Positions 1,370-57,900 of a stretch of 64,000 bases of DNA are shown piece by piece. Under the pieces are notes generated by a model. That model had not been told where the DNA came from. It saw nothing but the letters and a program-made list of their open reading frames with translations, and did not search any database. Origin of the DNA: Ramazzottius varieornatus (taxonomy: Eukaryota > Animalia > Tardigrada); the NCBI GenBank assembly GCA_001949185.1, contig BDGG01000007.1, positions 1,756,730 through 1,820,729 on the forward strand, read 5' to 3'. How positions within the stretch are numbered: position 1 is the first letter of the stretch; each line of letters begins with the position of its first letter. A program made the translations under genes and the position numbers.

Positions 1370-3067
1370 TTACACGGTATTTCCGGTCGTCAGATGAATC
1401 CAGTTGAGGTAGCTGGAGACCTTCGTATAGATGGCCGGTTTCTTGGCGAATCCGCACCTGCCAAACGAAGCACCCGTCAAGATTGGCGTTAGGAAGCAGA
1501 AAAGGTTTACTTACCCTTGGTCCCATCCGAAACTGACGAGACCTTGCAGCGACCAGTGGTCTTCCTTCTCGTCGTAGCAAACCAGAGGTCCTCCGCTGTC
1601 TCCCTTAAAAGCAGACACAGCTTCTTTTCGGCGCTAGGCAGTTTTCACTTCTCTGTCACTTTGTTTTCTCTTTACTTAATCTGGACTTCCACCTAGTTTC
1701 CTCTTTATTTTGACACGAGGGTTGTGCTTTTGCAGTCAAAGCTAGGGATATGCGCTCGCTCACCTTGCAGGCATCGACATGGCCGTCGGGGTAACCGGCG
1801 CAGATATTGCTATCCTTGACGCTGGGACCCCAGTAGCTTCGATCGCGACAGACGAAGCGCGAGAGGACCACCACACGACCTTGACGGAGAACACTGCTGA
1901 ACGGCGCATTGCCCGCACCGATCATACCTAAGAGAAGAAATGCCCGATCAATGGTTATCCTCGTTTTCCGGGCTATTGTTGGGACTTTGTATTTCATACC
2001 CCAGCCGGTCACCATACACGTCGTACCCACAGCCGGTTCTTCGTTGACTTTATGCGGCAAGCAGATGGGTGTCACCCTCCTGTGGTAGCGGATCGGTCGG
2101 GCTAAGCGAAGAATGGCAATGTCGTTGGCGAAGTTGTCGGCCTTGTTGTACATGGGATGAATGCGCCAACGGAGAACCGCGTAATCTTCCTCGCCCTGCT
2201 CGTATGCGTTAGCGTTGTGGTCACCCACCCGCACAACGTACTGCGCATTGGGTCCCCTGCCAATATTACAACCTCACTTGTTGAATAAAAGAGTCCAGGC
2301 TGTAGGACGATACCCTGGGTACTCGTAACCTCTTTGACTTACGATTCGAGACAGTGGGCAGCGGTCAGGATGTAGTTTTCGCTGATGATACTGCCTCCGC
2401 AAAACCAGGAAATTAGGTTTCGACCTTGTTTGGCACCCAAACGAATCTGCCATGGCCACTCGCCCAGGGGAGCCTCGACACCACCTATGAGATCGGTCAA
2501 AAGGACAACGTCCAGTAAATCTTTTAGGACCTATAACCTCTCTATGTGACGACCAGCTTGAACGTTAACGTTAACGTCACCGTACCTGTGAGCTGTGAAC
2601 TGGGTTCGCCTTGAAGCATTCGGCTAGACAGGCGATTGCGACCGCAAATGCTCATCACCTTCTGCGCACTTGCACCTGTAATTGAACAAACAATGCACTG
2701 CATTCACCGTAGAGGTCTTAACCAGCTCAATTTGATTGCATTCATTAGCTACCCGAAAACTAAACATTGTTTTTTCCCCGTTATCTTATCAAATTGTCAA
2801 ATTGGTTTCCGCATCAACTGTAATTTAGGTGTGTCCCCTCTGTCTAGTCAGACGCTGAAAGATGTCATGCGCTAGATGCCGATTAGGGGAAGCGATCTTT
2901 CCCGGAAAGTCATTAAAAAATCTTGACGAGGAAGCGACAATGAATAGGTACAATAAAAGCTCACCATTTGCTTGGGTATTTATCAGAAAAATTGGGAGGA
3001 GCCAGGAGAAAGCCCAAAGACATGTCCATAAATGCGCTGCCCACACTGTCGCGACCTTGGTCCTCAT
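1370..3067 (-). CDS. Secreted trypsin-like (S1A) serine protease, about 7 exons
   Basis: Signal-like exon MRTKVATVWAAHLWTCLWAFSWLLPIFLINTQANG, then ICGR, LIGGVEAPLGEWPWQ, CGGSIISENYILTAAHC (His), NDIAILRL (Asp), DACK|GDSGGPLVC (Ser, with Asp in the S1 pocket), PAIYTKVSSYLNWI-stop. GT-AG introns. Confidence 0.93.
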
Positions 3068-26370: not shown

Positions 26371-27588
26371 ATGGCATCCATCCTGCTCAAAGCACAACTT
26401 GCTAATGTCAGCTTGGTCCTGACAAACAGTACGGCCCATGCGCCGCTAAGAGGACCAGGGAGTCCACAAGACACTCGAACCTTCGCTTGGGCCACAGTTT
26501 CACTGGTCATCATCGGTTTTGTTAGTTCGCTGTGCTGCATGTACAGCAACTACCACCACCACGCCCAACCTTCCCAACGTTCGTCCACGCCTTCGGCTAT
26601 GAACATGTGGGTATTTTCCCTGTCTATGGCGTCCTTTCTCTTTTCTTCACTGATTCTCCCTGTCTACGCATACACCATGATCGAGCAGGTGAAGAATCCA
26701 CTTGGAGGGGATACTTTCCACCCATTCTGCCGCTTCATTGCCTTCACGTATTTTACACTGGTCGCAGTTTGCGCTTTCCCTCATGCCGCCATTGCCATCA
26801 ATCGTCTTCTGACGATTGTCTTCTCCAGTCAGTATCCGCGAGTCAAGTCCGTGGCTGTGACCCTTCTCCTAGTCACTCTGTCATGGTTGCTGCCTGTCGC
26901 CATGTTTGTCATCCCTCTTTTGACGCCACGATACGGTCACTATGGGTTGTCGGACAGCTCGCACCGTTGTGCATTCTTGAAGCTCGACCGACCAACAAAA
27001 TGGCATACAAGGCTTTTTCAGCGCTGGTTCCCTTTACCATCACTGTTCTGGCCTATCTTGGCATAATCGTTTTCCTGATTCTTTCTCGCCAAAGAGTAAC
27101 TCAACACCATCTTCCTGGTAGTGACCCGCGCAACCGGAGAAAGAAATTAATTAATACGAGGAAAGACTTGCAAGCGACCAAAATGGCGTTCATATTGTGC
27201 ATGGTATTTCTAATCTGCTTCATACCCAACTGCATTTTTGGCATTGCAGTTAGTTCACTGAAGGGACTACAGTCAATGGTCGGCATCGGTTTCGCATATT
27301 GGTCCTGGATAGGTGAGCGATCATGAGTCCTGCCCGGATAGTTGTCAGTACTGATGCTTCAGATGTTACCAGTTATCCAATAAATTTTACCACTAGTCCG
27401 AGTGAATATCGTCAGCATGCTAGATGCTTTGCTGTTTTGTTGGCTGCACAATCAACCCTTTGGTCTACCCGCTATTACATTCCGCCTTGCGCCGAAAGCT
27501 GTTCCGTCAGCGAAAGATACTGCCTTCCAAGTTAACACAACCGAAGAACAGCGCGGATACTGCTTTTCAGGCACAGAGCGGACCGTGA
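26371..27588 (+). pseudogene. Class A (rhodopsin-like) GPCR, frameshifted; pseudogene or assembly error
   Basis: TM1-4 in ORF 26371 (CRFIAF, AIAINRL, SWLLP), TM5-7 in a shifted frame from about 27000 (FLICFIP), and INPLVY after an intron at about 27313 whose in-frame acceptor reads TG rather than AG. Confidence 0.75.
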
Positions 27589-35767: not shown

Positions 35768-37344
35768 CTAAAGTTGTTCTATGCGGCTTAGACACACCAT
35801 GATACCGCTTTTGTTGTGGCGTACAGCGAAGACGAATGGGCGGTTGACGGTGACGACGAAAGGTGGCGCTATAGGTGAGGTCTCCGTCCGGAATGCACCA
35901 GGTATGGAGGACTTTACTTGAAGCCTCTCTTTCAGACTTTTGGACAATTCGCTAAGTGAACGGGCATCGAAGGAAGACTTCCGGTCTCCGGTGGGTGACA
36001 GTGGGAGATGGCCACGGTTCGACCCTCCCGGTTCTCTGACGCTCTCATCGGCGTCCGTCCCGTTCTCAGAAATATCTGAACGAAGAGTTAACCAGTCAAG
36101 CTTCTTACTGTACTTTGGTTTATAAAGAGATTTTTAACCTACTGAAGTATCCGCAATGACGGGCAGCGCTTAGGGCCACGGAAAAGCCTTCAGGGCTGCT
36201 GATCATTCGGTTCAAGTCGGCACGGTCGCCGAAAAGAGACTTGACACCGAGAACTCTGAACAGAGCGATGAGGTCCAGGTTGGAACCAACGGCAAACTTG
36301 GGTATCGCCAGATCGATGAGACGGCCACGCTTGTTGTGGTGGAAGTCGCGAACGACGCCGGGAGTCAATTGCTGGGTCAGCTGTTTGAGCGGACCTTTCC
36401 CCGTCGGTAAGAATATGAGCAGACTGGCATCGTTTTGCATGTAAGGTATCTCCAGAAAGATGACGCCCATTTTACGGTCTTCAACAAACGGTATGTTGAA
36501 GATACCGCGCATGTAATGGGTCTGGTATGCTTGACCATCGTCGCCCCTAAATATACCCTCGATCGTTTCCGCTGGGTTGAACGGCTCTTTCCACCTACAA
36601 TGAACAAGAACCATAAATTTGCACGTGTCTTGAATCATTTAAGTAGAGAAATTATCGTTGTACCTGGCGCGAAAACAAAATCCGTTGGCAAGGACTATCT
36701 GTGTTCGCTTGTTGATCGCTTCCGGCGGAAAGCTTTCCCGAACTCTGCCGTTCATACCTTCGCGGATATAGCGGTTGATCAGCTGCCGCGCTTCCTCAGG
36801 CCGTGAGCTGAAGGGCATCAACACAGCTTCAGCGCGCAGTTTGGCAATTCGTTCGATGTATTCAGGAAGAACCGCAATGCTGTCGTCCAGAAAAATCTTG
36901 TTGATACGGAAAACACGGAAACGTCCGTCGTTGGGGTCGTCGTAGCTTAGTTTTGATGGTTCGGCCCGTGTCTTGACCAGTCCAGCCAAGACGTACCTGA
37001 AATCCAAAGAGCTTAGTATCGCAAGTGGTATCTTGACACAGAAACGAGTAGGAGGATCGTACGGAGCTCGACAGACCGTATGAAAAAAAAATGACGGCAG
37101 TGGAATCGTACCTGAAAGCCATCTCCAGGTCGATCTCTCCACGTTCCGAGCCACTCCATTGTTCAATATGCAATGCATGGATCAACTCAAACTTTGTTGC
37201 ACCGTCTGATCCAAGGTAGATGAGCAAGAAGCCGTTTGAAGCCGTCAGAGGCGAGAACAGGAAATTCCCACTCGGCCGGAGTTTTCGCATAGCCCGGAAG
37301 AGGGAGAGACCCAACTGCTGAATTGGCGCACGCAAGATATCCAT
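35768..37344 (-). CDS. Serpin, probably intracellular and non-inhibitory, 4 exons
   Basis: NFLFSPL..LIYLGSDGATKFEL, INRYIREGMNGRV, IVLANGFCFRA|WKEPF, LEIPY, IFLP, LAIPKF, ISENGTDA, VNRPFVFAV. No signal peptide. Confidence 0.88.
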
Positions 37345-38898: not shown

Positions 38899-41800
38899 TC
38901 ACGAGTAGGTGGCGCTGTTCCACATGGAGCAAGTCATGCTGTCCCATTTTCGTTCGAACTTGATGAGTTCCGATCCTGCATCGTGCTTAACTTCCTTTCC
39001 CGTGTCTTCTGACTTAGTGGACTTGGCGGACTGCACGGACAGCGCCGGCGATAGCGATGTGCTTATCGGCCTAGCCGGAGAGTTGAAGGGCGTGTTCGAA
39101 GCTTCGAACCAGTCTTGTCTTGTTTCCGCCACGTCATGGCTAATCTTATCAGCAGACAACCAGAGCATTCATTCATGCTTTGGTTGACCGTAGTTGAGAT
39201 TCAACTCTGCCGCTCCATCGCTGGTCCAAAGCGGAGGATGCTTGTTGGACGTAGGATATAATCGCTGATCGCTCAAAGAATCAAAGGCGTCGATATTAAT
39301 AAAGTCGCTGTAACCAGAATAACGAATGTAGACTGTAGCTTTACGACAGGCCCCGACAGGGCATCAGATTGCAGGAAACAGAATACATGAAAAAAAAACA
39401 GGCTCGAACCTTGAGAGATCATTATCCGGGTTTGTGCCCGAGAGCTGGAAGCTAACCCATTCTTCCGGCTCTCCCCCTGCTGAGGCTTGGGCAAACAACG
39501 TAAACAGCCTTTGCAGATCCCGCAGGTCGCCTTCTTGAGTGGCCGTAAGACGATGTAATGTCCAGGCAAGCTTGACAATATCCCAACAGGTCAAGGCACA
39601 CTGACAAGGGATTAACGCCAGTCTGTCCACTCTGATCCTCAAACCAATATGATAGCATGATAGAGCAGAGTTTGCTCCACAAACTGAGATAAACTAAATC
39701 GGCGAAATAAAATCCTGGAAGACGCCACAGGAAGCGGAAGTGACGTCAAATTCTTACATCGACATGACATGACCAACTATACTAGCACAGTCTAAAATTT
39801 CACAGAACTCATGGAAGATAAATTTTACAAAGGTGATACTGATCGTAGAAGTGATGAAAGCAGAGAGGAGCTTTGCACCAGCCGCACTTAAGCAAAAGCC
39901 GGTCGTCGCAGTGTTCATGGTCGCAATGACCAGTCAACTTCTTGGGGAAGAGAATTCGGTAGGATTTACATAGTCAAAGGACTCGTCAGTATAGCCGCAC
40001 AGATGCCAGGCCTGGTTCACTAGGTCTCCAAACCGAGGAGACTGAAATTGTTGGTAAACCAAAGAATGCATCTTGAGGATTACGTCTCGATGATGAACTT
40101 GAAGTGGAAGGCTGTGCAAAATGATGAAACTGGAGATCTTCCGGAAGAAGTCTTTATATATTCGGAAGAAGAGTCTGTCCAGTGGTTGGATATCACCAGT
40201 CACTTTCGGAGGAATCGTGATCATTTCGTATTCCAGTTCTTCAGGCTTGAATTCCAAAACAGCTTCCTGGTCAGAATAGGTTCTCCACGAATCGGCCAGC
40301 AGAATGCAGTGATCTTCCACATGAGAAAACAATATCTTTTCACACCATTCCAAGTAGAGCTTCTTTGTCATCTTCCCCGAAGCCGAAGCAGTGACATAGA
40401 GGTTGTCAGCTTTAAACATTGTCCTTGCCACAATAGGACCGAAAACGCCTTTGTCCTCCTGGAGAGTGATCCACAGTTGTGGGAGAAACTTGCGTGTGCC
40501 GGGCGAAATGGTCATCATAACCGTATAGCTACGCGTCATGGAGTTCTCCAACTGACAGATCGCAAGAACATGTTTTGCGCCGGCCAGATGCAGTGTGCGC
40601 CCTGGTCTCATCTTGTAATCGAACCCAGACTGATCCGTGTTCCACATACAGTCCAAGCCGTAATCTGAGATCCTCGGTCTGACAAGGGCGACACACTCCT
40701 CCGCAGTTTTCGTTACTTGCGGAGCTTCTTGAATGTATTTGTCGGTCACGAACTTGATGATCTTCCGATCGACGATGCCGTAATACCTACAATATCGACC
40801 CCGTTAGTGTGGCGCAGTAACTCGTGAGCGAAATTCTCGGTTGAAGTGATCTGCGTAAGCAATGATACATATTTCATTTTAATACTTCAATGTGTTTACC
40901 TCCTCAACTTTCCCACCCAGTCCGGAAACGCCGTGAAACCTACCAGGCCAATGGTTCGGTTCGCAGTAACAGCCCAACGTCGAATATCCATATCTTTCAC
41001 AATATGAGGCCTCTGCTTGGCCAGGAAGAAGTGCTTGCCAGTCTCCAAACGCAGCGCCTTCAGCTTACCATATCTGGAACCGCCCTCAGCAACATGTCGT
41101 TCCCATTCTTGGAGTTGTCGAATACTTGTGACTTTCTTGAACTTGGTCTGGACACACGAAAGGCTACGTCGTTTCTTCGTAGCGAAATTCTTCCAGAAAT
41201 CGACGGAGCGTTTGTTCTAGTCGAGGGTGACTGCGTTACTTGGCGGCTGTTTTGGCTTCGGTATTCGCGGGACATAGAGTTCGTTGGATGATGGTTCCGT
41301 TCCACTGGAGAAAGGCTCGACGACTTTATCTTCTTGGCTAGGATTTTCGTCGGGTTCAGCCAGCTGATTAGACGCAACAACCAACTTCTCGAACTCGTCG
41401 AACGTCTGCATATCTGTTTGCAGTTCATATTGCAGGTCTTCCTCACGTGCCAACGAAGAACTACCTGCTCGGTTGATTTTGACATCCATATATTCTGAAA
41501 CAGGAATAGAAAGGTGGAATATCTCTGCCATAATATCAATGTCAGCCATAGTGAACGGCAACAGTACAATACCTTTGACGAGTTCTTTTAACTGCTTATC
41601 AGCCTCGCTCGGTTGTCCATCCAGTTGGAAGAGCTGCTTGTAGTCCTTCTCCAGAAGCTTCAACACATTCATCGGATTAACGGAATCCATTTCGGGCGAC
41701 AATGGAAATCACGCAGTAACGGAACGATGATGTAAGAGCAATGAAGCAACAGGCACAGAAAAACTGATTGCGCTTGGCTTAGCGTAGAGTACAAGCGCAA

Positions 41801-49555: not shown

Positions 49556-51308
49556 ATGGCGTTCTCATGCGGCATCGCGATAGTTGTGCTGGTAAGACAA
49601 ATCTTAATCTTCTTGCTGTATATTAATGCCAATGCGAGACGTTTGATTCCGAAAACATCTTGTAGTCAATGTATGAGTATGTTTTCAGGCAATAGCACTG
49701 ATCTTTTCGACGCCGGTCTTTGGCAATGGGAAGAGAGGAACTCGTGTCGGCGAACTGGTGGGACCTTTGTCTTCATGCTCGATCAGTTCAAATACGGACT
49801 TCTACCAACCTTGCATAGACCCGCGGTCCACCTGTGTGCTGGACAGTACTGGTACGGGAAGGTACGTTTGTCAATGCAAAACAGGATTCGAGCCAAGCGA
49901 TGACTTCTCCAAGTGTATTAATGGTAAGTCTTGTCGAATTGATTAAGAATAAGTGCTTGTGAAATATCGCTGCTCAATCAGTACTTTCTGTCGACACCCA
50001 TCACAAGTTTATCATTATAACTAACTACTTGCATCTTACCAACGGCAGACGCTTCGGTAACACTGAATGCCACGGAATGTCTGGACGATAGTGACTGCGC
50101 TCGCACGTTGTCGGTCTGCCGCGCGAACCGTATCATTCCAACCGCAGTTCCCGGCGGTGCTAAACCGACTGTCTCTTCCACTGGCAGAAGGTGCCAGTGC
50201 CCCGACGACAAGGACTTTGACCCAAAAACCGGCACATGTGCTACAGGTACGAGCTGCCTCTGGTCAGGTTTCCACCCCTTACCTCAACCCCCAACGCGTT
50301 CACGCTACATAATGGCACATGCTTGTGTGATATGTCTTGGCAGCGTTCACAGCAAGTGATGGTTGCTACCAAAGGAGCGGAACCCCGTACTGCAGATACC
50401 GTAACCCCGAATATGTCTGTTCATCTTCAACGGCCACAACCACTCCAAATTCGTGCACTTGTCAGCCTCCGGCCCAGTTCGATAAAGTCACACTGGCATG
50501 CGCAAGTAGGTACTGATCAAAAGCAGAAAAGGAAGTTTGGAACGTTTCACGTGAAGTCGTTCATTAGATCCAGCACTAAAAGCCTGCAAAGGTGACAATG
50601 ATTGTATTGACGTGAAGATGGACACTGGGACTTCGACCACGTCCACTGCAACCTGTGACACTAAAACGGGAAAGTGTGTCTGCGTCATGAAGGCTCAACC
50701 TGCGTCTCCCAATACAGGCCCCGCTGTTGTGCCAGTAATTCCCCAAGGCACCCCGGGCTTTCCTACCTATGCTCCCGGCCTGCCTGACTTCAAGTGCACA
50801 CGTAAGAATCTATCAAACGTCTATGTTCTTTCAAGTCCTATGGCAGCCATGGTTGATGCTGTAACTTTGACTGGATAGCTGTCCCGGTCCAGACTGCCTG
50901 TACGGACAACACCAACTGTGCGACAGGTCTCCAACACTTTTGTTGGAAAGCTTTGTCGACTGCTACATCAGGTCTCTGCATGTGTCTACCGCTGACAAGA
51001 CCCGCCCTGAACGGTTTACTGTGTAACGGTATGCTTAAGTCGGTAACAGTAGAGTTTACTGCACTTTCGCACACGCATCCCTTATCTGTCAATTTTCTTC
51101 AGATGCTTTCGGAAGATGCTGCAATCCAGCTCTACCCTTCAACACTTATCAGTGCGGTCTACCAATCAACCCACTTCCAATCGGGGTGTCAAACCTTAGT
51201 TGTCAATCGGGATTCTGTGGATGCGCACCCGGTACCACCTACCAAGCACAAAGAGGATGTGTTACGGCCGTATCGTCCAACGGAGCAACCTGCAATATAC
51301 GCTCGTAG
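49556..51308 (+). CDS. Secreted Cys-rich repeat protein (EB-module/EGF-like), about 7 exons
   Basis: Signal MAFSCGIAIVVL|AIALIFS, repeated C..D.DC...C....C.C units (CLDDSDC, CKGDNDC, CTDNTNC), ending CGCAPGTTYQAQRGC...CNIRS-stop. Confidence 0.72.
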
Positions 51309-51596
51309 AAGCTTCAGAAACATGCTCCAATCTGAACCGTAATTTACAGTTTTGAGCGTAACGCGGAAATCCTGAAGCATTTCGTTGTCAAGTTCGAAAA
51401 TAATGCTGTCCAACACGGCCAGGATCATGAACATGTGGTATGTTATGTGTGGTGGTTACTCACACCTTCAAATTACGTAACAACGTCGATAGGTTCAGCC
51501 CGATAATAAATGCACTTCGAACATGACGCAATCTCGAAATGAGCAAAGGAAGTTACTCTGTCAAAGGTACATGCATGACGAAACACCGCAGGTCTG

Positions 51597-52434
51597 TTAC
51601 TGGCGGGGAACCCTGATCCACAGAGCGGGTGTCTGGGGTGGCGACCAGTTATCGGCTTCGGCGACATGGGCTTGCTGGACCTTGTAGGTTTCACCGTTGT
51701 AAGACACCATGTCACCCATCTTGTAGGTGTTGCCTCGGGCCCAGGCCGGATGGGAAGCACCAGCGCCAGCAGCGCTTCCTTCAAAAGCACCAACAGCGAC
51801 AACGGGGGCGCTAGTCAGACCGATCAGACCGGTGGAAGCGACAGGAGCCTCGGTGGTGGTAGTGGTGGTGGTAGCCTCGGTGGTGGCTTCTGTCTGGGCT
51901 TCAGTTTGAGCTTGAGTCTGAGCCTCGGTTTGGGCCTCGGTGGCAGCGGTGGTGGCTGGCGTGTCGATGGGCTCGGCGGATACCTGAACACTGGCAACGG
52001 GAGCGGTCTGAGGCTGTGAAGAGACATCTTGCGAAGCGGTATACTGAGCAGAGGAGCCTTGTCCGACATCGGCGACGGCAGATCCTGTGAGAAATTGTTT
52101 TACATTAAGATTGATTGACCGATCGAGCGATAAACGCTTGGTTTCCGCGGGTAAATATTGACGCTTTGAGAGTAGGATTATTGACAGATGGAGAAAGTAA
52201 AGTCGTAAGAAGAGGAGGCTGATGCATACCTGAAGACTGGGCAGCTCCGCTGGACACAACAACGGGCACGGGTACAGCGATGACTGGAACTCCTTTGGCG
52301 CCGACAATATCCACGGTGGGGCCGCTTCCGGCAGCAACAGACATCACAGTCACTCCGGATCCATCACCTTCAGGAGAAGGACGAGCCAGAGCCACATAGG
52401 CAAAGCACAAAGCAACCAGGACCTTGACGAGCAT
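51597..52434 (-). CDS. Secreted Thr/Ala-rich stalk protein with C-terminal CBM5/12 (ChiA1-type) chitin-binding module, 2 exons
   Basis: Signal MLVKVLVALCFAYVALA, intron about 52086-52228, TEAQT/TTTT stalk, then AWARGNTYKMGDMVSYNGETYKVQQAHVAEADNWSPPQTPALWIRV. Confidence 0.9.
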
Positions 52435-53250
52435 TTTCTGGTGTTTGAGCAGAGAACTTGACTAAAATACCCAAGTGCTGGAGGGACTGACACTTGCCGA
52501 TTCACAAAAAAATGACACTGAACTTTGTTGGACAGTCAACCCGTCTATGTACTGTTTGCCTGCACACCTTGTGCTTCTGTTTGTTCGGAAAATAGTGACG
52601 ACGACAGTGGAGAACCCACGGTGAGTGATGGACCAAAGTCCAGCACAAGCGTTGAAGTGTTGCGTTAAACTATGTTCTCCATCGGGGAACTGCCGCAAGG
52701 CTGTAAGGGACCAGCAAACTGCAATGAGTGTTGATTCAAGCAGGAAATGGACCGTATCGATCTGCATCTCGCCGAGAAAAGACAACATCTGCGCTGGAAC
52801 TGATTTACGTAATTCACCGGAACTTGGTGGCACACCTGAAAGCAAATCAGATTTTTCCAAAAATTCTCCATCTGCTCTAAAACTGCACCTACTACACAGC
52901 AGCCTCTTGCATCCCCAGAAGAAACAGAAGCATAGCTAAATATTCCGGCCACTACTTCTCTCGTCTGATTCGATTTCATCGGAAAAAAAATTCAGCTCAG
53001 TCGGTGCACAGTTTCATGCTTGTTTTCTATTTTTCACATCGAGTATTACGCAGCAAAGTCCAGTGTACGTTGGAACATGGTACTGAAACTTCAGACGGAC
53101 CGTTTTGATTCACCTGAATCGGCTAAAAGTCTGGAAAAGATTGATATTCAAAGTGAAACTTGCTGCCGTTCTTGGCCTTTAAACCATCCGAAATCATGTG
53201 TTGAAGATTCCGGTCATCTTATGAAAGAAGTGTTTGTTATCCAAAGTTAG

Positions 53251-54250
53251 TCAGGGCGGAGGCACCTTGATCCACATTGAAGGCGTCTGCGGCGGAGTCC
53301 AGTCAATGCCTTAGGAAAAAACAATTTGATTTCGCATCGAGTGTCAGTGAGCAACCTCCTCGAACTCAATGTTCGAGCGATAACTAAAGAGACAATGTAC
53401 CTTCTGCCGTATGATGCACAACCGCTCGGTAAACATCACCCTTGAAGTCAACTTCGTCGCCCACCTGATATGTGGCGCCTTTCTGCCACTGACCCAGATG
53501 GACCTTGGCCGTAACGGACTTTGGTGCGCTAGTCAAACCGATCAACCCGGTATGAGTTTGAGCAGTGGTCGTTGTGGCGGATGTTGTGGACGTTGTGTCT
53601 TGCGCACTACTTGGTCCCGGTCCTGGCGAAGCACCTTTTGCCTCTGTGCCGGACGAAGCATCCGTTGGTATTGCAATCACCGTTTTTGCCACCAAGATTT
53701 GGATGGCCTCGGTGGTGGACATAGCATGCGTTGTCGGTTTTGTGGTCGTTGTCGTCGTTGTCTCTGGAGTTGTAGTTGTGGTAGCTTCTGTGGAGGTGGT
53801 GGTCGTCGTCGACGTAGCCCCTGGGAGTCACAGTTAAGCACGTAAACTCCTCGTAGTAAAGAATGAGAAGATCAAGACCGTACTGTATAACATCCGCAGG
53901 CGATTTTCCCGTTCAAACTACTTTATCATTATCTAATATTTGTTCCATGAAATCAGTCGCTTGTTGGAATTGCCTCATTCGATGTACAAACCTTTAACAT
54001 GAGCAACCGTAGCAGTGTGAATAGCTCCACTACCGGTCGCAGCGGTTAAGCCTCCTTGATCAGATGCGACTGCGGTAGCTTCAACGGGAAATGGCACAGC
54101 AACAACCAGGACTCCCGTGGCGTTTCCCACATCAGTTTTGGGTGCCTGGTTAAGGATGCCACCGACATCGCCAGTGCCCCCTGCCGGCGGGCTCCGAGGA
54201 CGAGCTAGGCATGCACTAACACAGTAAACCAACATCCAATAAACTCTCAT
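53251..54250 (-). CDS. Tandem paralog: secreted Thr-rich stalk plus CBM5/12 module, 3 exons
   Basis: Signal MRVYWMLVYCVSACLA, shared TGLIGLTSAP motif, QWQKGATYQVGDEVDFKGDVYRAVVHHTAE|GIDWTPPQTPSMWIKV with an intron (about 53312-53400) inside the module. Confidence 0.88.
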
Positions 54251-54958
54251 TTTGCTCCGAATTCCTTTCGATTCTTGGTATGAGTAAAAAGTTATTTGGG
54301 AACAAAATTCGTCCAGTTCGATGGAATTTCTGACAAGCGGAAAGTGATTGTGACTGATAGACTGCTCAAACTTTGGAGAGATTATCATCTGATAGCGGTT
54401 AAACAAGCACTGATTGATTTTCAAGGCGGCTCGAGCGAAGTTACGTAAAAACACCGCTGCGTTACTTCGGGACAATGTTCAATTAGCCTACCGCATCATG
54501 ATCAGGAATAGTAAGCCGACGCTTTCAAGTAGGCAGATGATTTCTTTTGTGGGCGGTGGTAATGCATTCCTTGAGCGATGATCACTTTAGCGCGAACATT
54601 GTAAGCACGGGTTCCCGCGGGTGGCTCGCATGGGCATCATATTGTTTCCAAAAGCTATGAGCCTCCCCAGGGACTCGATCTCTGCTTCTCGACAAAGACA
54701 GGCTTTATAACATCCCACCGTTGTGCGGGAAGCATTCTTCGTTTTTTCGAGCATAAACGAAGACGTGTACATCTTGGTGTATTGGTGTATTTATTTTGCC
54801 CCTTTGCAAGACGCTGTATTTGAGTTTTCTGGTCTCAAGCTCGTCACATTCTTTTCGACTAGCAGATAGTGAAAACTATTCGAAAATCCGCCTTGCATTT
54901 TAAGACACTCTTCTGGTTTGTTTTTAAAAACAAGAGATAAGTTCACTGCACATGACGG

Positions 54959-57900
54959 TCAGGGTTGACTGGAAGTGTCGTTCGGTCCATTAAACATATC
55001 ATCGGCGGGCAATAAAGTACCGTCTGCTGCGTATGCCGCGTTCTGTTGTTGCATTGTAGTGTTGAGAAAGGCGCGTAGTCCTGCCAGGATATCCGGCGGA
55101 AGAGCAATGTTGGCCAGTCGCGTATCCAACGACGAGTCGTTGCGCATTTGGAAGAGCAATATTTGATATGTGAAATAGAAGCCGGCCAACTGCAATAGAG
55201 AACAAGAGGAAGAATCAAACGAAGAAGATATACTCGAAATAGCCGCCCATGTCAATATTGACACGGCAACCCGTCACTGTCTCTCATCTGTATGCCGTTC
55301 CTATTAAATGCGTATCGAGTTTCCTCTTAGGTTCTTTGGGGTCTCTCTTTCTTATTCGCTCATCCCACTCATTTGCCGCCATCTCTACAACCCATCGCCA
55401 AACAGGGAAAAGCACAACATATGATCGAATATTAATGGTCTTCCACAACGAAAGATGCTGAAGAGAAATGTTTGGAACGCGAATAAGAGCAATGAGGATA
55501 CGTCATTTTGGCCGATTACAGTATTTTTTTCCCGAAACGGTAAAGCATATTATTTTCAGGATACCGCACGTATTCGAAATCCTTCGCTTTATGGTGTAAA
55601 GTCCTTCTTTTTCAATGCCTTGTTTTCGTAAAATGGCAAGTTCCAGGTTCGTCTACAGCTTCGGTGCTAGAGCAATTACAATAGCTTGACGTGGTCGACA
55701 GAAGAAAACCACAATTTCTGAATGCAGTTGGGCGGTGTATCCTCGATATTTGTGCCTTTGTTCGCGGACTTTCGTGGTGAAGTCACCCGCATGCTGTTTC
55801 TTCTATAAGTGACTTTACAGTGGTTGGCGGGCTTAACCTCCGAACAAAGACGCGAGAGGAAACATGAAAAGTCATTCATTACGGGAAAGGTCTGTGATCT
55901 GTTATGAGTGAGATGCGCCTTCTTTAATGCTGACAGCCAATCTTATTTGTGGACCATGTTTGGTGCTGGTGAGGCAATCACCAAAAGGATGAGCGGAAGC
56001 GAAGAGCCAGACACTCAATAGTCTGATCACACTTTGCGCCGACAGCTTTATCCTTTTTGTAGGGCGAACAATAGAAGTTTTATGCACTTACCGATAAAAT
56101 GGTCGTCATGTCGATGGTGAATATGCCCAGCGCGGTGTAGCCCGTCTGGCAGCCGGAAAGCTTTTGTAGGAAGACCGTCAAGTGCTGAATTTCCTGGACG
56201 CTCAAAGAGCGCTGATCGATCTCATACAGCTTGGACAGCGGAAGTAGCGCCTGTAACGATCACAAACAGCCCCCAATCAAATCTTCCAGAAAAAAGTGTT
56301 GCATCATAAACGCACTAGTCGTGCGTGCCATATTTGAAATGACATCTACACAGCCAAATTTGCCTAGGCTGAAAAAACCAGTCGGCAACTGTTTGTAGTT
56401 CTCTCCCCCAAAATTTGCGGCTCGATACCACGCAACATTGTCGCTATCTCATCTCAGATTAAACCGGTCTTCTTGACCTGTCATTTTGTTAGCAAAGGAT
56501 GCCAAAGTATCAAGTAAACGGACTAAATTTGAGGTAGTTCACGAGCGCGGGTTCCCAGCTTTTTGTATGGGGTACGCTTTTGGAGTACGGGAATGACACA
56601 TTTTTACGGTCGATTTGTCGTGCTTGATGGTTGCACTGAGTTGATGGAATGTCGGCGAGATGTTGATGAGGCTAGTCATAGGCCTTGCCAAGCCGCACAA
56701 AGTTTATGAGTTGAGAAGTCGAGAAGCGGAATCTGAAGAGCAATTTTCCGGATAAGTGTCATTTACATTTCTTACTGTGTCGAGCTGTTCGGTTTGCCTC
56801 GTTGAGGACCACAGTATGATAAACGACGAGCAACAATCACTCGTGACAGTTAGAGCTACTGTATGTAGTGGCTCCTTGTCCCAATTGAGCTATACATCCA
56901 CAACACGCTATAGTTTTGCCACCACATTTCCCCCCTCATCAACATCAACAAACACAATCGATATGCCAAATCTAAACTCTACCCATCCATAAAGAAATCC
57001 CCATACCGATATGCAAATCGAAATTATTTTTTGGTAATCAAAGCAAATCAAGCTGGTGATACCGATTACAGAGTATACAGCTAGGGCTACATTTTATCCC
57101 GCTGATCCACGCGGCTTTTTGCTTATACAATTTGGCTAGCTAATCTGTTTTTGACTTTGGATTCAAAAGTCAGTGCAAAATCGAGCTGCAATAAGGTCCT
57201 CGTGAGGTCACGAAGAATGTGGGCACTTACAGCAACGTTGACTTTGGAGCCGCACCAAAGGATAACGAGAACCTGGGCAAGATTGAGGAGGCAGAAATAA
57301 ACATAGCTCAGGACGGTTATGACCCCCATATCGCCTCGTTTCAGAAAGTCATAAATAACATAAACTTGGGCCAGCAAGCCGAACATTCCGGAGGCTAGCC
57401 CGATCAGGACGTAAGGCGAGAATATGGCGTCGACCCGTTCCACCAGTGAGCACAGCTTGGTGTGCTTCAGCCGGTACCACTCTAGCATGCTGGTGTCGGC
57501 CATGACGCCTTCTTTGGAGATCTGCACGGCTAACGAACGATAAAACTGGGTAAACTGCAAAACAATGGCATCGGACAGCAGCAGGAAGAGAGTGGCAGCA
57601 AAGACGTAGTCGAAGGACCGAAAGACGAAGGCCGTCACAATCAACAACTTCACCACGATGTTGTCGACGGAGAACGGAAACATGATGTATTCCTGGAAAT
57701 CCTTGTAGACATCCAGTGGTATCAGTAGTGGTCCGATCAGTGAGTAACAGTTCAAGGTCAAGGCTAAGAAGGCTGGAAAAAAAGAAGGAAGCTTTCAGTG
57801 AGAAGGCGGAATGTGGAATATTGGCAAGGCTTTTAATATAGGTTACCTATTATAATGAGGAGTTTCTGTTTGGATCGGAAGCGCTGATTGAAGTTGAATT

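What the first reader, a model, noticed from the sequence alone, without database searches (positions are those of the whole stretch)
51597..54250. Tandem animal genes ending in a bacterial-type CBM5/12 chitin-binding module: candidate domesticated horizontal transfer
Seen: two spliced paralogs with signal peptide, a VAVP(V/F)PV motif, a mucin-like Thr/Ala stalk, a conserved TGLIGLTSAP motif and a roughly 48-aa C-terminal module W-x5-Y-x2-GD-x-V-x-(Y/F)-x-G-x2-Y...H...W-x-P-x3-P-x2-W. Known: this matches the Bacillus circulans chitinase A1 chitin-binding domain type (CBM12/CBM5), typical of bacteria and some fungi, whereas animals usually use CBM14 or Rebers-Riddiford domains. There is no catalytic domain, and one paralog has an intron inside the module, which argues against contamination. 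Inference: a foreign module recruited as a non-enzymatic chitin-anchored mucin (cuticle, gut matrix or antifungal) and then duplicated.
Basis: partly seen in the sequence, partly recalled or inferred. Interest (0 to 1): 0.85.

Follow-up and report, generated by a model that had tools for sequence, protein, structure and literature searches.

The report
Tardigrade mucin-like proteins with bacterial chitin anchor
Two neighbouring, expressed and correctly spliced tardigrade genes encode secreted, threonine-rich "stalk" proteins that end in a chitin-binding module whose closest non-tardigrade relatives found here are bacterial, so an early tardigrade probably captured it from a bacterium and reused it in several proteins.

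Summary
The window is Ramazzottius varieornatus (gene B = RvY_12483).

- **Genes:** gene A (51597-52434, minus strand) and gene B (53251-54250, minus strand) are tandem paralogues. Each has a signal-peptide-like N-terminus, an AVP(V/F)PV motif, a disordered Thr/Ser/Ala stalk, a TGLIGLTSAP motif and a C-terminal Pfam CBM_5_12 module (E 1e-16 and 1e-12). There is no catalytic domain.
- **Splicing:** all three introns, including the one inside gene B's module, are confirmed by spliced contigs in 4 runs from 4 studies.
- **Fold:** the module folds with pLDDT 90 onto bacterial CBM12 domains, including the Bacillus circulans ChiA1 chitin-binding domain.
- **Relatives:** the named non-tardigrade relatives are all bacterial, most of them Actinomycetota (Nocardia, Mycobacterium). 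They are 54-63% identical, as close as the tardigrade paralogues are to each other. No other animal was found, but the eukaryote survey was limited.
- **Age:** the family predates this locus. A two-module gene lies on another contig (this scan had already noted it, s1-795167), with orthologues in Hypsibius and Paramacrobiotus. Hypsibius also has an astacin+2xCBM fusion.

UniProt and a 2017 supplement already flag the domain; the transfer reading seems unpublished. Chitin binding is untested.

The parts
51597..52434 (-). Gene A: two exons, 230 codons. Secreted Thr/Ala/Gln-rich protein ending in a CBM5/12 module.
   Evidence: Translations. The intron is confirmed by spliced contigs in 4 runs. 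This product was not retrieved from the protein collections, so it may be missing from, or modelled differently in, the public annotation.
52230..52434 (-). Gene A exon 1: signal-peptide-like N-terminus (MLVKVLVALCFAYVALA|RP), a Gly/Val/Ala-rich region and the AVPVPV motif. Ends in phase 1.
   Evidence: It is 38% identical to gene B exon 1. Apart from gene B, there is no other copy in the genome.
52085..52229 (-). Gene A intron: 145 nt, GT..AG, GC 0.41.
   Evidence: Joint 52083/52229 (cut +1), CT..AC on the plus strand, seen in X1, X4, X5 and X7. Composition.
51834..52084 (-). Gene A stalk: 83 aa, 23% Thr, 11% Ser, 22% Ala, 13% Gln, no Lys, Arg or Cys. It contains a 12-nt (4-codon) tandem repeat at 51885-51935.
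   Evidence: Weak Pfam Mucin match, E 0.037.
51804..51833 (-). Gene A TGLIGLTSAP motif.
   Evidence: Also present in the unnamed relatives P0001 and P0140.
51618..51746 (-). Gene A CBM5/12 (CBM12-type) module.
   Evidence: Pfam 60.9 bits, E 1.2e-16. Six-frame genome hit of 63.9 bits. AlphaFold2 pLDDT 90.3. Foldseek TM 0.86 to 4tx8, rmsd 0.8 to the Vibrio deacetylase CBM12, and 43% identity to 1ed7.
53251..54250 (-). Gene B: three exons, 245 codons. It equals RvY_12483 / GAV01839.1 / UniProt A0A1D1VTF5.
   Evidence: Both introns are confirmed in 4 runs.
53992..54250 (-). Gene B exon 1: signal-peptide-like N-terminus (MRVYWMLVYCVSACLA|RP) and the AVPFPV motif. Ends in phase 1.
53821..53991 (-). 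Gene B intron 1: 171 nt, GT..AG.
   Evidence: Joint 53819/53991 (cut +1) in 4 runs. Composition.
53552..53820 (-). Gene B stalk: 89 aa, 39% Thr, 11% Ser.
   Evidence: AlphaFold2 pLDDT is below 50 over residues 1-18, 27-104, 106-151 and 157-178 of the whole protein.
53522..53551 (-). Gene B TGLIGLTSAP motif.
53401..53491 (-). Gene B CBM5/12 module, N-terminal two thirds (profile positions 1-29), at the end of exon 2.
   Evidence: Pfam 29.3 bits for exon 2 alone. The whole public protein gives 48.1 bits over profile positions 1-43.
53310..53400 (-). Gene B intron 2: 91 nt, GT..AG, phase 1, inside the CBM module.
   Evidence: Joint 53308/53400 (cut +1) in 4 runs. Without splicing, the frame stops at 53384.
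53251..53309 (-). Gene B exon 3: the last third of the CBM module (IDWTPPQTPSMW), the tail and the stop codon.

Best explanation
Gene A and gene B are a tandem pair of Ramazzottius varieornatus genes. Each encodes a small secreted protein made of a cleavable signal peptide, a short Gly/Val/Pro-rich head, a disordered Thr/Ser/Ala-rich stalk that is probably O-glycosylated, a conserved TGLIGLTSAP linker and one C-terminal CBM12-type chitin-binding module.

Shown: the gene structures, their expression and splicing, the domain identity and fold, and the lack of any catalytic domain.

Inferred mechanism: the module docks its conserved surface aromatic residues (the Trp near its start and the Trp of the H-x6-W-x-P motif) on crystalline chitin. 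This tethers a hydrated, glycosylated stalk to a chitin surface. Candidate surfaces are the cuticle, the buccal apparatus, the gut lining or the egg shell. The protein would then act like an insect peritrophin or mucin, but with a different anchor.

Inferred origin: the module descends from a bacterial CBM5/12, most like the 'H-T-x-x-A-x-N-W-T-P-P-x-T-P-x-L-W' subtype of Actinomycetota. It was captured once, before the Hypsibioidea/Macrobiotoidea split. It then gained introns and was shuffled into three architectures: stalk plus one CBM (these two genes), a tandem 2xCBM protein, and astacin plus 2xCBM in Hypsibius. The stalk gene then duplicated in tandem.
For: Structure and expression: (three introns in 4 runs from 4 studies). 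My gene B model is identical to the public RvY_12483 protein.

Domain: Pfam E 1.2e-16 and 1.2e-12. By sequence, the PDB matches are all bacterial CBM12: Vibrio deacetylase E 1.7e-12 and ChiA1 1ed7 E 4.6e-8. AlphaFold2 pLDDT is 90.3, and Foldseek gives TM 0.79-0.86 to those same domains. The rest of gene B is predicted disordered.

Bacterial affinity: the nearest Atlas clusters are 100% Bacteria. A Lachnospiraceae module is 58% identical. After the tardigrade proteins, the named hits are Nocardia, Mycobacterium and Lentzea proteins, plus Paenibacillus and Chitiniphilus. Gene A's module is 56% identical to a Nocardia module but only 44-48% identical to tardigrade paralogues, and the contig-9 module is 63% identical to Nocardia. 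A Nocardia module scores 86 bits on the tardigrade-only profile, above several tardigrade modules.

Age and single origin: orthologues exist in Hypsibius exemplaris (BV898_03965) and Paramacrobiotus metropolitanus. The tree that holds all tardigrade modules together is slightly better than the free tree (p-AU 0.52 and 0.57). Yoshida et al. 2017 (PMC5531438, S3 Data) list two Tardigrada-restricted orthogroups carrying IPR003610.

Host context: trypsin, GPCR, serpin, gustatory-receptor-like and EGF-like genes lie in the same window.
Against: The module is only about 45 residues long. The tree backbone is unresolved, and in the free tree the tardigrade modules fall into four groups. No donor or direction can therefore be read from the tree.

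The searches could not survey eukaryotes systematically. The word-indexed search is length-limited. Only the best 150 of 5096 profile hits were visible, and most of those carry no name. CBM5/12 modules in other animals, fungi or protists may therefore have been missed.

Chitin binding, secretion, glycosylation and the tissue of expression are all untested. Gene A has Val where ChiA1 (from my memory of its sequence) and the other tardigrade modules have Thr after the conserved His.
Confidence: 0.62

Rival explanations
1. The module is ancient in eukaryotes or animals and was inherited vertically. Tardigrades kept it while most other animals lost it. The similarity to bacterial modules then reflects strong constraint on a tiny fold.
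For: CBM5/12 is a very short and strongly constrained domain, and the tree cannot polarise its history. My survey of eukaryotes was incomplete.
Against: No non-tardigrade animal appeared in any search. The orthogroups are Tardigrada-restricted in a multi-species comparison. The tardigrade modules share the one-residue-longer H..NW loop and the NWTPPxTP motif with a particular Nocardia/Mycobacterium/Paenibacillus subtype. They are as close to those modules (54-63%) as to each other, which is hard to reconcile with a separation as old as the split between bacteria and eukaryotes.
Confidence: 0.15
2. The origin is the same, but the proteins do not organise the animal's own chitin. They are soluble pattern-recognition or opsonin-like proteins that bind chitin of fungi or of food, serving immunity or feeding.
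For: There is no catalytic domain and the proteins look secreted. Earlier notes of this scan describe glycan-recognition genes nearby (LysM, GH16-ectodomain kinases); I did not test these. Tardigrades live among fungi.
Against: Nothing argues against it directly. There are no expression data by tissue or by challenge. The long glycosylated stalk resembles structural mucins and peritrophins more than it resembles known opsonins.
Confidence: 0.2
3. The signal is an artefact: bacterial contamination of the assembly, or a chance ORF.
For: Earlier tardigrade claims of horizontal transfer were largely contamination (background cited in PMC5531438).
Against: Three spliceosomal introns are confirmed by RNA-derived contigs from 4 studies. 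Intron GC is 0.40-0.41 against 0.54-0.61 for the exons. Animal genes lie on both sides within one 2.3-Mb scaffold. Orthologues are present in three independent tardigrade assemblies.
Confidence: 0.01

Closest known systems
Chitin-binding domain of Bacillus circulans WL-12 chitinase A1 (PDB 1ED7; CBM12) and the CBM12 pairs of Vibrio chitin oligosaccharide deacetylases (4NY2, 3WX7, 8YH4)
   Same: Same Pfam family and same fold. phmmer gives E 4.6e-8 to 1.7e-12. Foldseek gives TM 0.71-0.86, rmsd 0.8-1.7 A and 28-43% identity. The W..Y..GD.V.Y.G..Y...H....W.P...P..LW pattern is shared.
   Different: In bacteria the module is appended to enzymes such as chitinases, deacetylases, LPMOs and proteases. 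Here it ends a non-enzymatic, intron-bearing animal gene. The tardigrade loop between His and Trp is one residue longer than in the Vibrio deacetylase CBM12 (gap in the alignment) and, from my memory of its sequence, than in ChiA1.
Actinomycetota 'carbohydrate-binding proteins' (Nocardia) and AA10 LPMO+CBM5/12 proteins (Mycobacterium, Lentzea)
   Same: These are the closest named modules. They are 54-63% identical in the tree alignment, and BLASTP gives up to 71% to the Paramacrobiotus protein. They share the QAHTA.A.NWTPP.TPALW motif and the same loop length. Some also carry Thr/Pro-rich linkers ahead of the module (P0179, P0173).
   Different: They are bacterial proteins with an N-terminal Ig-like or AA10 catalytic domain, and they are encoded in bacterial genomes.
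Insect peritrophins and intestinal mucins, and cuticular CPAP proteins (CBM14 / peritrophin-A domains)
   Same: The predicted working principle is the same: a secreted protein with a Ser/Thr-rich glycosylated region plus a chitin-binding module, and no enzyme. This comparison rests on my own knowledge of these families.
   Different: The anchor is unrelated. CBM14 is a six-cysteine, disulfide-bonded animal fold, whereas the module here is a cysteine-free CBM12 of bacterial type.
Cellulose-binding proteins and CBM2-bearing cellulases of plant-parasitic nematodes, accepted cases of bacterial carbohydrate-binding modules acquired by animals
   Same: A bacterial-type CBM sits in a secreted animal protein, with introns and gene duplication. 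This is the closest precedent for the evolutionary scenario. It rests on my own knowledge and was not tested here.
   Different: The module family differs (CBM2, which binds cellulose), and so do the host phylum and the biology (parasitism of plants).
Streptogrisin C of Streptomyces griseus (protease plus C-terminal chitin-binding domain)
   Same: NCBI names the Paramacrobiotus two-module orthologue 'streptogrisin-C-like', because the CBM is the only matching part. The Hypsibius astacin+2xCBM protein repeats the protease-plus-CBM logic.
   Different: The two genes in this window have no protease domain.

Membership tests
Pfam CBM_5_12 (PF02839) / CAZy CBM12 subtype | The sequence matches the family HMM above the curated cut-off (26.2 bits). 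| tested here: met
   Gene A exon 2 scores 60.9 bits. The gene B protein P0120 scores 48.1 bits over profile positions 1-43. The six-frame genome scan gives 63.9 bits.
Pfam CBM_5_12 (PF02839) / CAZy CBM12 subtype | Small all-beta fold that superposes on solved CBM5/12 domains. | tested here: met
   AlphaFold2 pLDDT 90.3. Foldseek gives TM 0.86 to 4tx8, rmsd 0.8 A to 4nyu, and TMt 0.81 to 1ed7.
Pfam CBM_5_12 (PF02839) / CAZy CBM12 subtype | Closer to the CBM12 type (ChiA1, with the His-Thr...Trp-x-Pro motif) than to the CBM5 type (ChiB/ChiC). | tested here: met
   1ed7 scores E 4.6e-8 and the Vibrio CBM12 scores E 1.7e-12, against ChiB E 0.4 and ChiC 2d49 E 0.35. In Foldseek, rmsd is 0.8-1.7 A to CBM12 domains against about 3 A to ChiB.
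Pfam CBM_5_12 (PF02839) / CAZy CBM12 subtype | Conserved surface aromatic and Pro residues implicated in chitin binding (in ChiA1: W656, H681, T682, W687, P689, P693; numbering from my memory). | tested here: inconclusive
   Trp, His, Trp-x-Pro and Pro-x-Leu/Met-Trp are invariant in the tardigrade modules and align with the Vibrio CBM12. Gene A has Val for the Thr. I could not align residue by residue to 1ed7 with a tool, and the ChiA1 numbering is from memory.
Pfam CBM_5_12 (PF02839) / CAZy CBM12 subtype | Binds insoluble chitin. | not testable with these tools
   This needs a pull-down of the recombinant module on alpha- and beta-chitin.
Horizontally acquired gene or module in an animal genome | The sequence is truly in the host genome: spliceosomal introns, host-type flanking genes, transcription. 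| tested here: met
   Three GT..AG introns are confirmed in 4 runs of 4 studies. Trypsin, GPCR, serpin, gustatory-receptor-like and EGF-like neighbours are present.
Horizontally acquired gene or module in an animal genome | The closest relatives outside the recipient lineage are from the donor domain. | tested here: met
   All named non-tardigrade hits are bacterial, at 54-63% identity.
Horizontally acquired gene or module in an animal genome | Absent from the recipient's sister lineages (other Metazoa). | tested here: inconclusive
   No other animal appeared in any search, and the orthogroups are Tardigrada-restricted in PMC5531438 S3 Data.
Horizontally acquired gene or module in an animal genome | The recipient clade nests inside donor diversity with support. 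| tested here: inconclusive
   With 47-48 alignment columns the backbone is unresolved. Monophyly of the tardigrade modules is not rejected (p-AU 0.52 and 0.57). No rooted test was possible.
Mucin-like secreted glycoprotein | N-terminal signal peptide and a Ser/Thr/Pro-rich, Cys-free, disordered repeat region. | tested here: met
   Composition and the 12-nt repeat come, and the low pLDDT. The signal peptide was judged by eye only, because no predictor was available.
Mucin-like secreted glycoprotein | Dense O-glycosylation. | not testable with these tools
   This needs glycoproteomics or lectin blots.

The most novel reading that the evidence does not exclude
A single capture of an actinobacterial CBM12 chitin-binding module by an early eutardigrade seeded a chitin-recognition toolkit that no other animal has. 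The module was shuffled by phase-1 introns into mucin-like anchors (these two genes), a tandem-CBM protein and an astacin protease. Tardigrades would then build or police their chitinous structures partly with a bacterial part, alongside the animal CBM14 system.
Probability: 0.4. Interest if true: 0.7.

Novelty: new variant of a known kind. Interest (0 to 1): 0.52.

Why it matters
Horizontal transfer into tardigrades was first overstated and then largely retracted, so well-documented cases matter. This case has three RNA-confirmed introns, an animal gene neighbourhood, conservation across three tardigrade families, and a bacterial subtype as its closest relative.

It is also a module-level event. 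A 45-residue bacterial chitin anchor is now found in three tardigrade protein architectures, which illustrates how foreign domains enter animal extracellular proteins.

Functionally, it offers testable candidates for how the tardigrade cuticle, feeding apparatus or gut matrix is organised, or for how fungi are recognised. This would be a chitin-binding mucin built on an anchor different from the CBM14 and Rebers-Riddiford systems of arthropods.

Novelty is limited. UniProt already labels gene B as a chitin-binding type-3 protein. The orthogroups appear, without comment, in a 2017 supplement.

Tried and rejected
**Searches that gave little**
- The search for homologous proteins with gene A exon 2 found only one unnamed relative. 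Restricted to the module, it found nothing. The word index is too coarse for a 50-residue domain, so these blanks mean little.
With the single module it found one Lachnospiraceae locus.
The organisms behind the unnamed ENA and JGI relatives (P0001, P0140, P0167, P0043, P0172, P0148, P0076, P0105) could therefore not be identified.

**Literature**
- Searches for tardigrade plus CBM_5_12, for the RvY locus tags, for CBM12 or ChtBD3 in Metazoa, and for ChiA1 W687 found nothing relevant.
- No supplements of Hashimoto 2016 are held.

**Analyses**
- The first 'careful' tree of 139 modules returned no answer; quick and reduced trees replaced it.
- Contamination was considered and rejected.
- A search for further family members sharing the N-terminal exon found only genes A and B.
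- An astacin+CBM fusion like that of Hypsibius was sought in this genome and not found.
- A bacterial promoter and terminator scan at the 3' end of gene A was empty and is irrelevant.

Gene A was searched exon by exon, by reference. Gene B's full length was used only through the public protein P0120.
Full report
**What is there.** The stretch 51597-54250 holds two genes on the minus strand.
- Gene A has exon 1 at 52434..52230 and exon 2 at 52084..51597.
- Gene B has exon 1 at 54250..53992, exon 2 at 53820..53401 and exon 3 at 53309..53251.
- All three introns are GT..AG, all are phase 1 by my reading, and their GC is 0.40-0.41 against 0.54-0.61 for the exons.
Each exon was searched by reference. 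For gene B, the public protein P0120 turned out to be identical to my model.

**Expression and splicing.** Twenty public runs of the same organism hold the stretch or part of it. Contigs from four runs of four studies were laid on 51400-54400. In every run, contigs skip exactly 52085-52229, 53310-53400 and 53821-53991, with CT..AC ends on the plus strand. The genes are therefore transcribed and spliced as modelled. This includes the intron that cuts gene B's chitin-binding module, without which the frame stops at 53384. The runs were only guessed to be RNA, but the spliced contigs show that they are. Contig depth cannot rank expression.

**Organism and context.**
- Gene B's product is GAV01839.1, RvY_12483 of Ramazzottius varieornatus. 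UniProt A0A1D1VTF5 auto-names it 'Chitin-binding type-3 domain-containing protein'. The genome size of 55.8 Mb in 200 contigs fits.
- The window also carries trypsin, rhodopsin-type GPCR, serpin, gustatory-receptor-like and EGF-like cysteine-rich genes, plus a DDE transposase remnant.
- Contamination is excluded.

**The proteins.** Both start with a hydrophobic signal-peptide-like segment ending ALA|RP or CLA|RP. This was judged by eye, because no predictor was available. Next comes a Gly/Val/Ala-rich head with AVPVPV or AVPFPV (38% identity between the two).
- The stalks are 83 and 89 residues long, with 34% and 50% Thr+Ser and no Cys. Gene A's stalk has no Lys or Arg.
- Gene A's stalk contains a four-codon tandem repeat.
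- The motif TGLIGLTSAP follows, and then the C-terminal module.
- Pfam finds only CBM_5_12: 60.9 bits, E 1.2e-16 for gene A exon 2; 29.3 bits for gene B exon 2 alone; 48.1 bits for the whole gene B protein. There is no catalytic domain.
- AlphaFold2 models gene B with confidence only over about the last 55 residues. Most of the rest is below pLDDT 50, as expected for a disordered stalk.

**Identity of the module.**
- By sequence, the best solved relatives are the CBM12 domains of Vibrio chitin oligosaccharide deacetylases (E 1.7e-12), a Chromobacterium chitinase, and the Bacillus circulans ChiA1 chitin-binding domain 1ED7 (E 4.6e-8). CBM5 domains of Serratia ChiB score only E 0.4.
- The gene A module folds with pLDDT 90.3. 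It superposes on those same domains: TM 0.86 to 4tx8, rmsd 0.8 A to 4nyu, and TMt 0.81 with 43% identity to 1ed7.
- The Trp near the start, the His, the Trp-x-Pro and the Pro-x-(Leu/Met)-Trp are invariant in all tardigrade copies. From memory, these correspond to residues implicated in chitin binding in ChiA1.

**The family in tardigrades.**
- The genome has four modules. Two are in this window. Two lie in tandem in one gene on contig 9, which this scan had already noted as s1-795167.
- The N-terminal exon is shared only by genes A and B.
- The two-module gene has orthologues in Hypsibius exemplaris (BV898_03965) and in Paramacrobiotus metropolitanus, where it is named 'streptogrisin-C-like'. 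In the tree, its second modules group together across species; the first modules do so only in part (Paramacrobiotus with Hypsibius; the Ramazzottius pair stays unresolved). The internal duplication therefore probably predates the Hypsibioidea/Macrobiotoidea split.
- Hypsibius also has an astacin protease with two such modules. Ramazzottius lacks that fusion.
- Unnamed ENA proteins resemble gene A (P0001), gene B (P0140, with 94% identity in the module against 69% overall, which suggests constraint on the module) and the contig-9 gene (P0167).
- Yoshida et al. 2017 (PMC5531438, S3 Data) list two Tardigrada-restricted orthogroups with IPR003610, each with one Hypsibius and one Ramazzottius member.

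**Origin.**
- A profile of the tardigrade modules finds 5096 proteins among 1.84 billion representatives.
- Every named non-tardigrade relative is bacterial: Nocardia, Mycobacterium, Lentzea, Paenibacillus, Chitiniphilus and a Lachnospiraceae genome. The nearest Atlas clusters are all bacterial.
- Unnamed close relatives have bacterial-looking architectures, such as GH8, reprolysin-like plus TSP3, and phage tail collar.
- Gene A's module is 56% identical to a Nocardia module and 54% to the Lachnospiraceae one, against 44-48% to its tardigrade paralogues. The contig-9 module reaches 63% to Nocardia.
- Nocardia and Mycobacterium modules share the one-residue-longer His..Trp loop and the NWTPPxTPALW motif.
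- The 47-48-column trees are unresolved at the backbone. Holding all tardigrade modules together gives a slightly better likelihood than the free search (p-AU 0.52 and 0.57), so one capture is compatible with the data.
- No other animal appeared in any search.
- I put bacterial ancestry of the module at about 0.75-0.8, and an actinobacterial source at about 0.4.

**Function.** Nothing was measured. The architecture (signal peptide, glycosylatable disordered stalk, one intact chitin anchor, no enzyme) points to a chitin-tethered, mucin-like protein. This is analogous to insect peritrophins and mucins, which use the unrelated CBM14. The site could be cuticle, buccal apparatus, gut or egg shell. 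The alternative of fungal chitin recognition remains open.

**Novelty.** The domain call exists in UniProt and in a 2017 supplement. I found no paper that discusses these genes, their bacterial affinity or the three architectures. The closest precedent, from my own knowledge, is the bacterial CBM2 of plant-parasitic nematodes. I class the finding as a new variant of a known kind, of moderate interest.

Noticed in passing
window 52620-52743 (plus strand): In run X4, one contig joins 52619/52743 with GT..AG ends on the PLUS strand (donor GGTGAGT), between gene A's start and gene B's end. The same contig also carries the minus-strand introns of both genes. This suggests a spliced plus-strand (antisense or intergenic) transcript that overlaps both genes' untranslated regions and was merged by the assembler. 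Run X1 shows low-depth unspliced contigs there.
   Followed up: partly
window about 49750-51308 (plus strand): A gene with several EGF-like cysteine-rich segments ends about 290 nt from gene A's stop, in convergent orientation. Gene A's RNA contigs run on about 1.4 kb past 51400 in three runs, probably because overlapping 3' ends were merged.
   Followed up: partly
window 51597-52434: Gene A's product never appeared in the protein collections, although gene B's did. It may be missing from, or modelled differently in, the public annotation.
   Followed up: partly
G000 contig 9, 474941-475213 (L002 1348-1641, plus strand): A third CBM5/12 gene has two tandem, cysteine-containing modules in its last exon. 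Orthologues are in Hypsibius (BV898_03965) and Paramacrobiotus ('streptogrisin-C-like'). This scan noted it before as s1-795167.
   Followed up: partly
protein P0079 (Hypsibius exemplaris OQV22802.1): An astacin metalloprotease carries two C-terminal CBM5/12 modules. This couples an animal protease to the bacterial-type anchor, and no counterpart was found in R. varieornatus.
   Followed up: partly
window 57123-57761 (minus), 26371-27066 (plus), 36120-37178 (minus), 1656-2234 (minus), 39934-40749 (minus): Exons that match a gustatory-receptor-like 7TM protein, a rhodopsin-type GPCR, a serpin and a trypsin, plus a DDE_1 transposase remnant. Together they form an ordinary animal neighbourhood.
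   Followed up: partly
The LysM part may lie in other exons.
   Followed up: no
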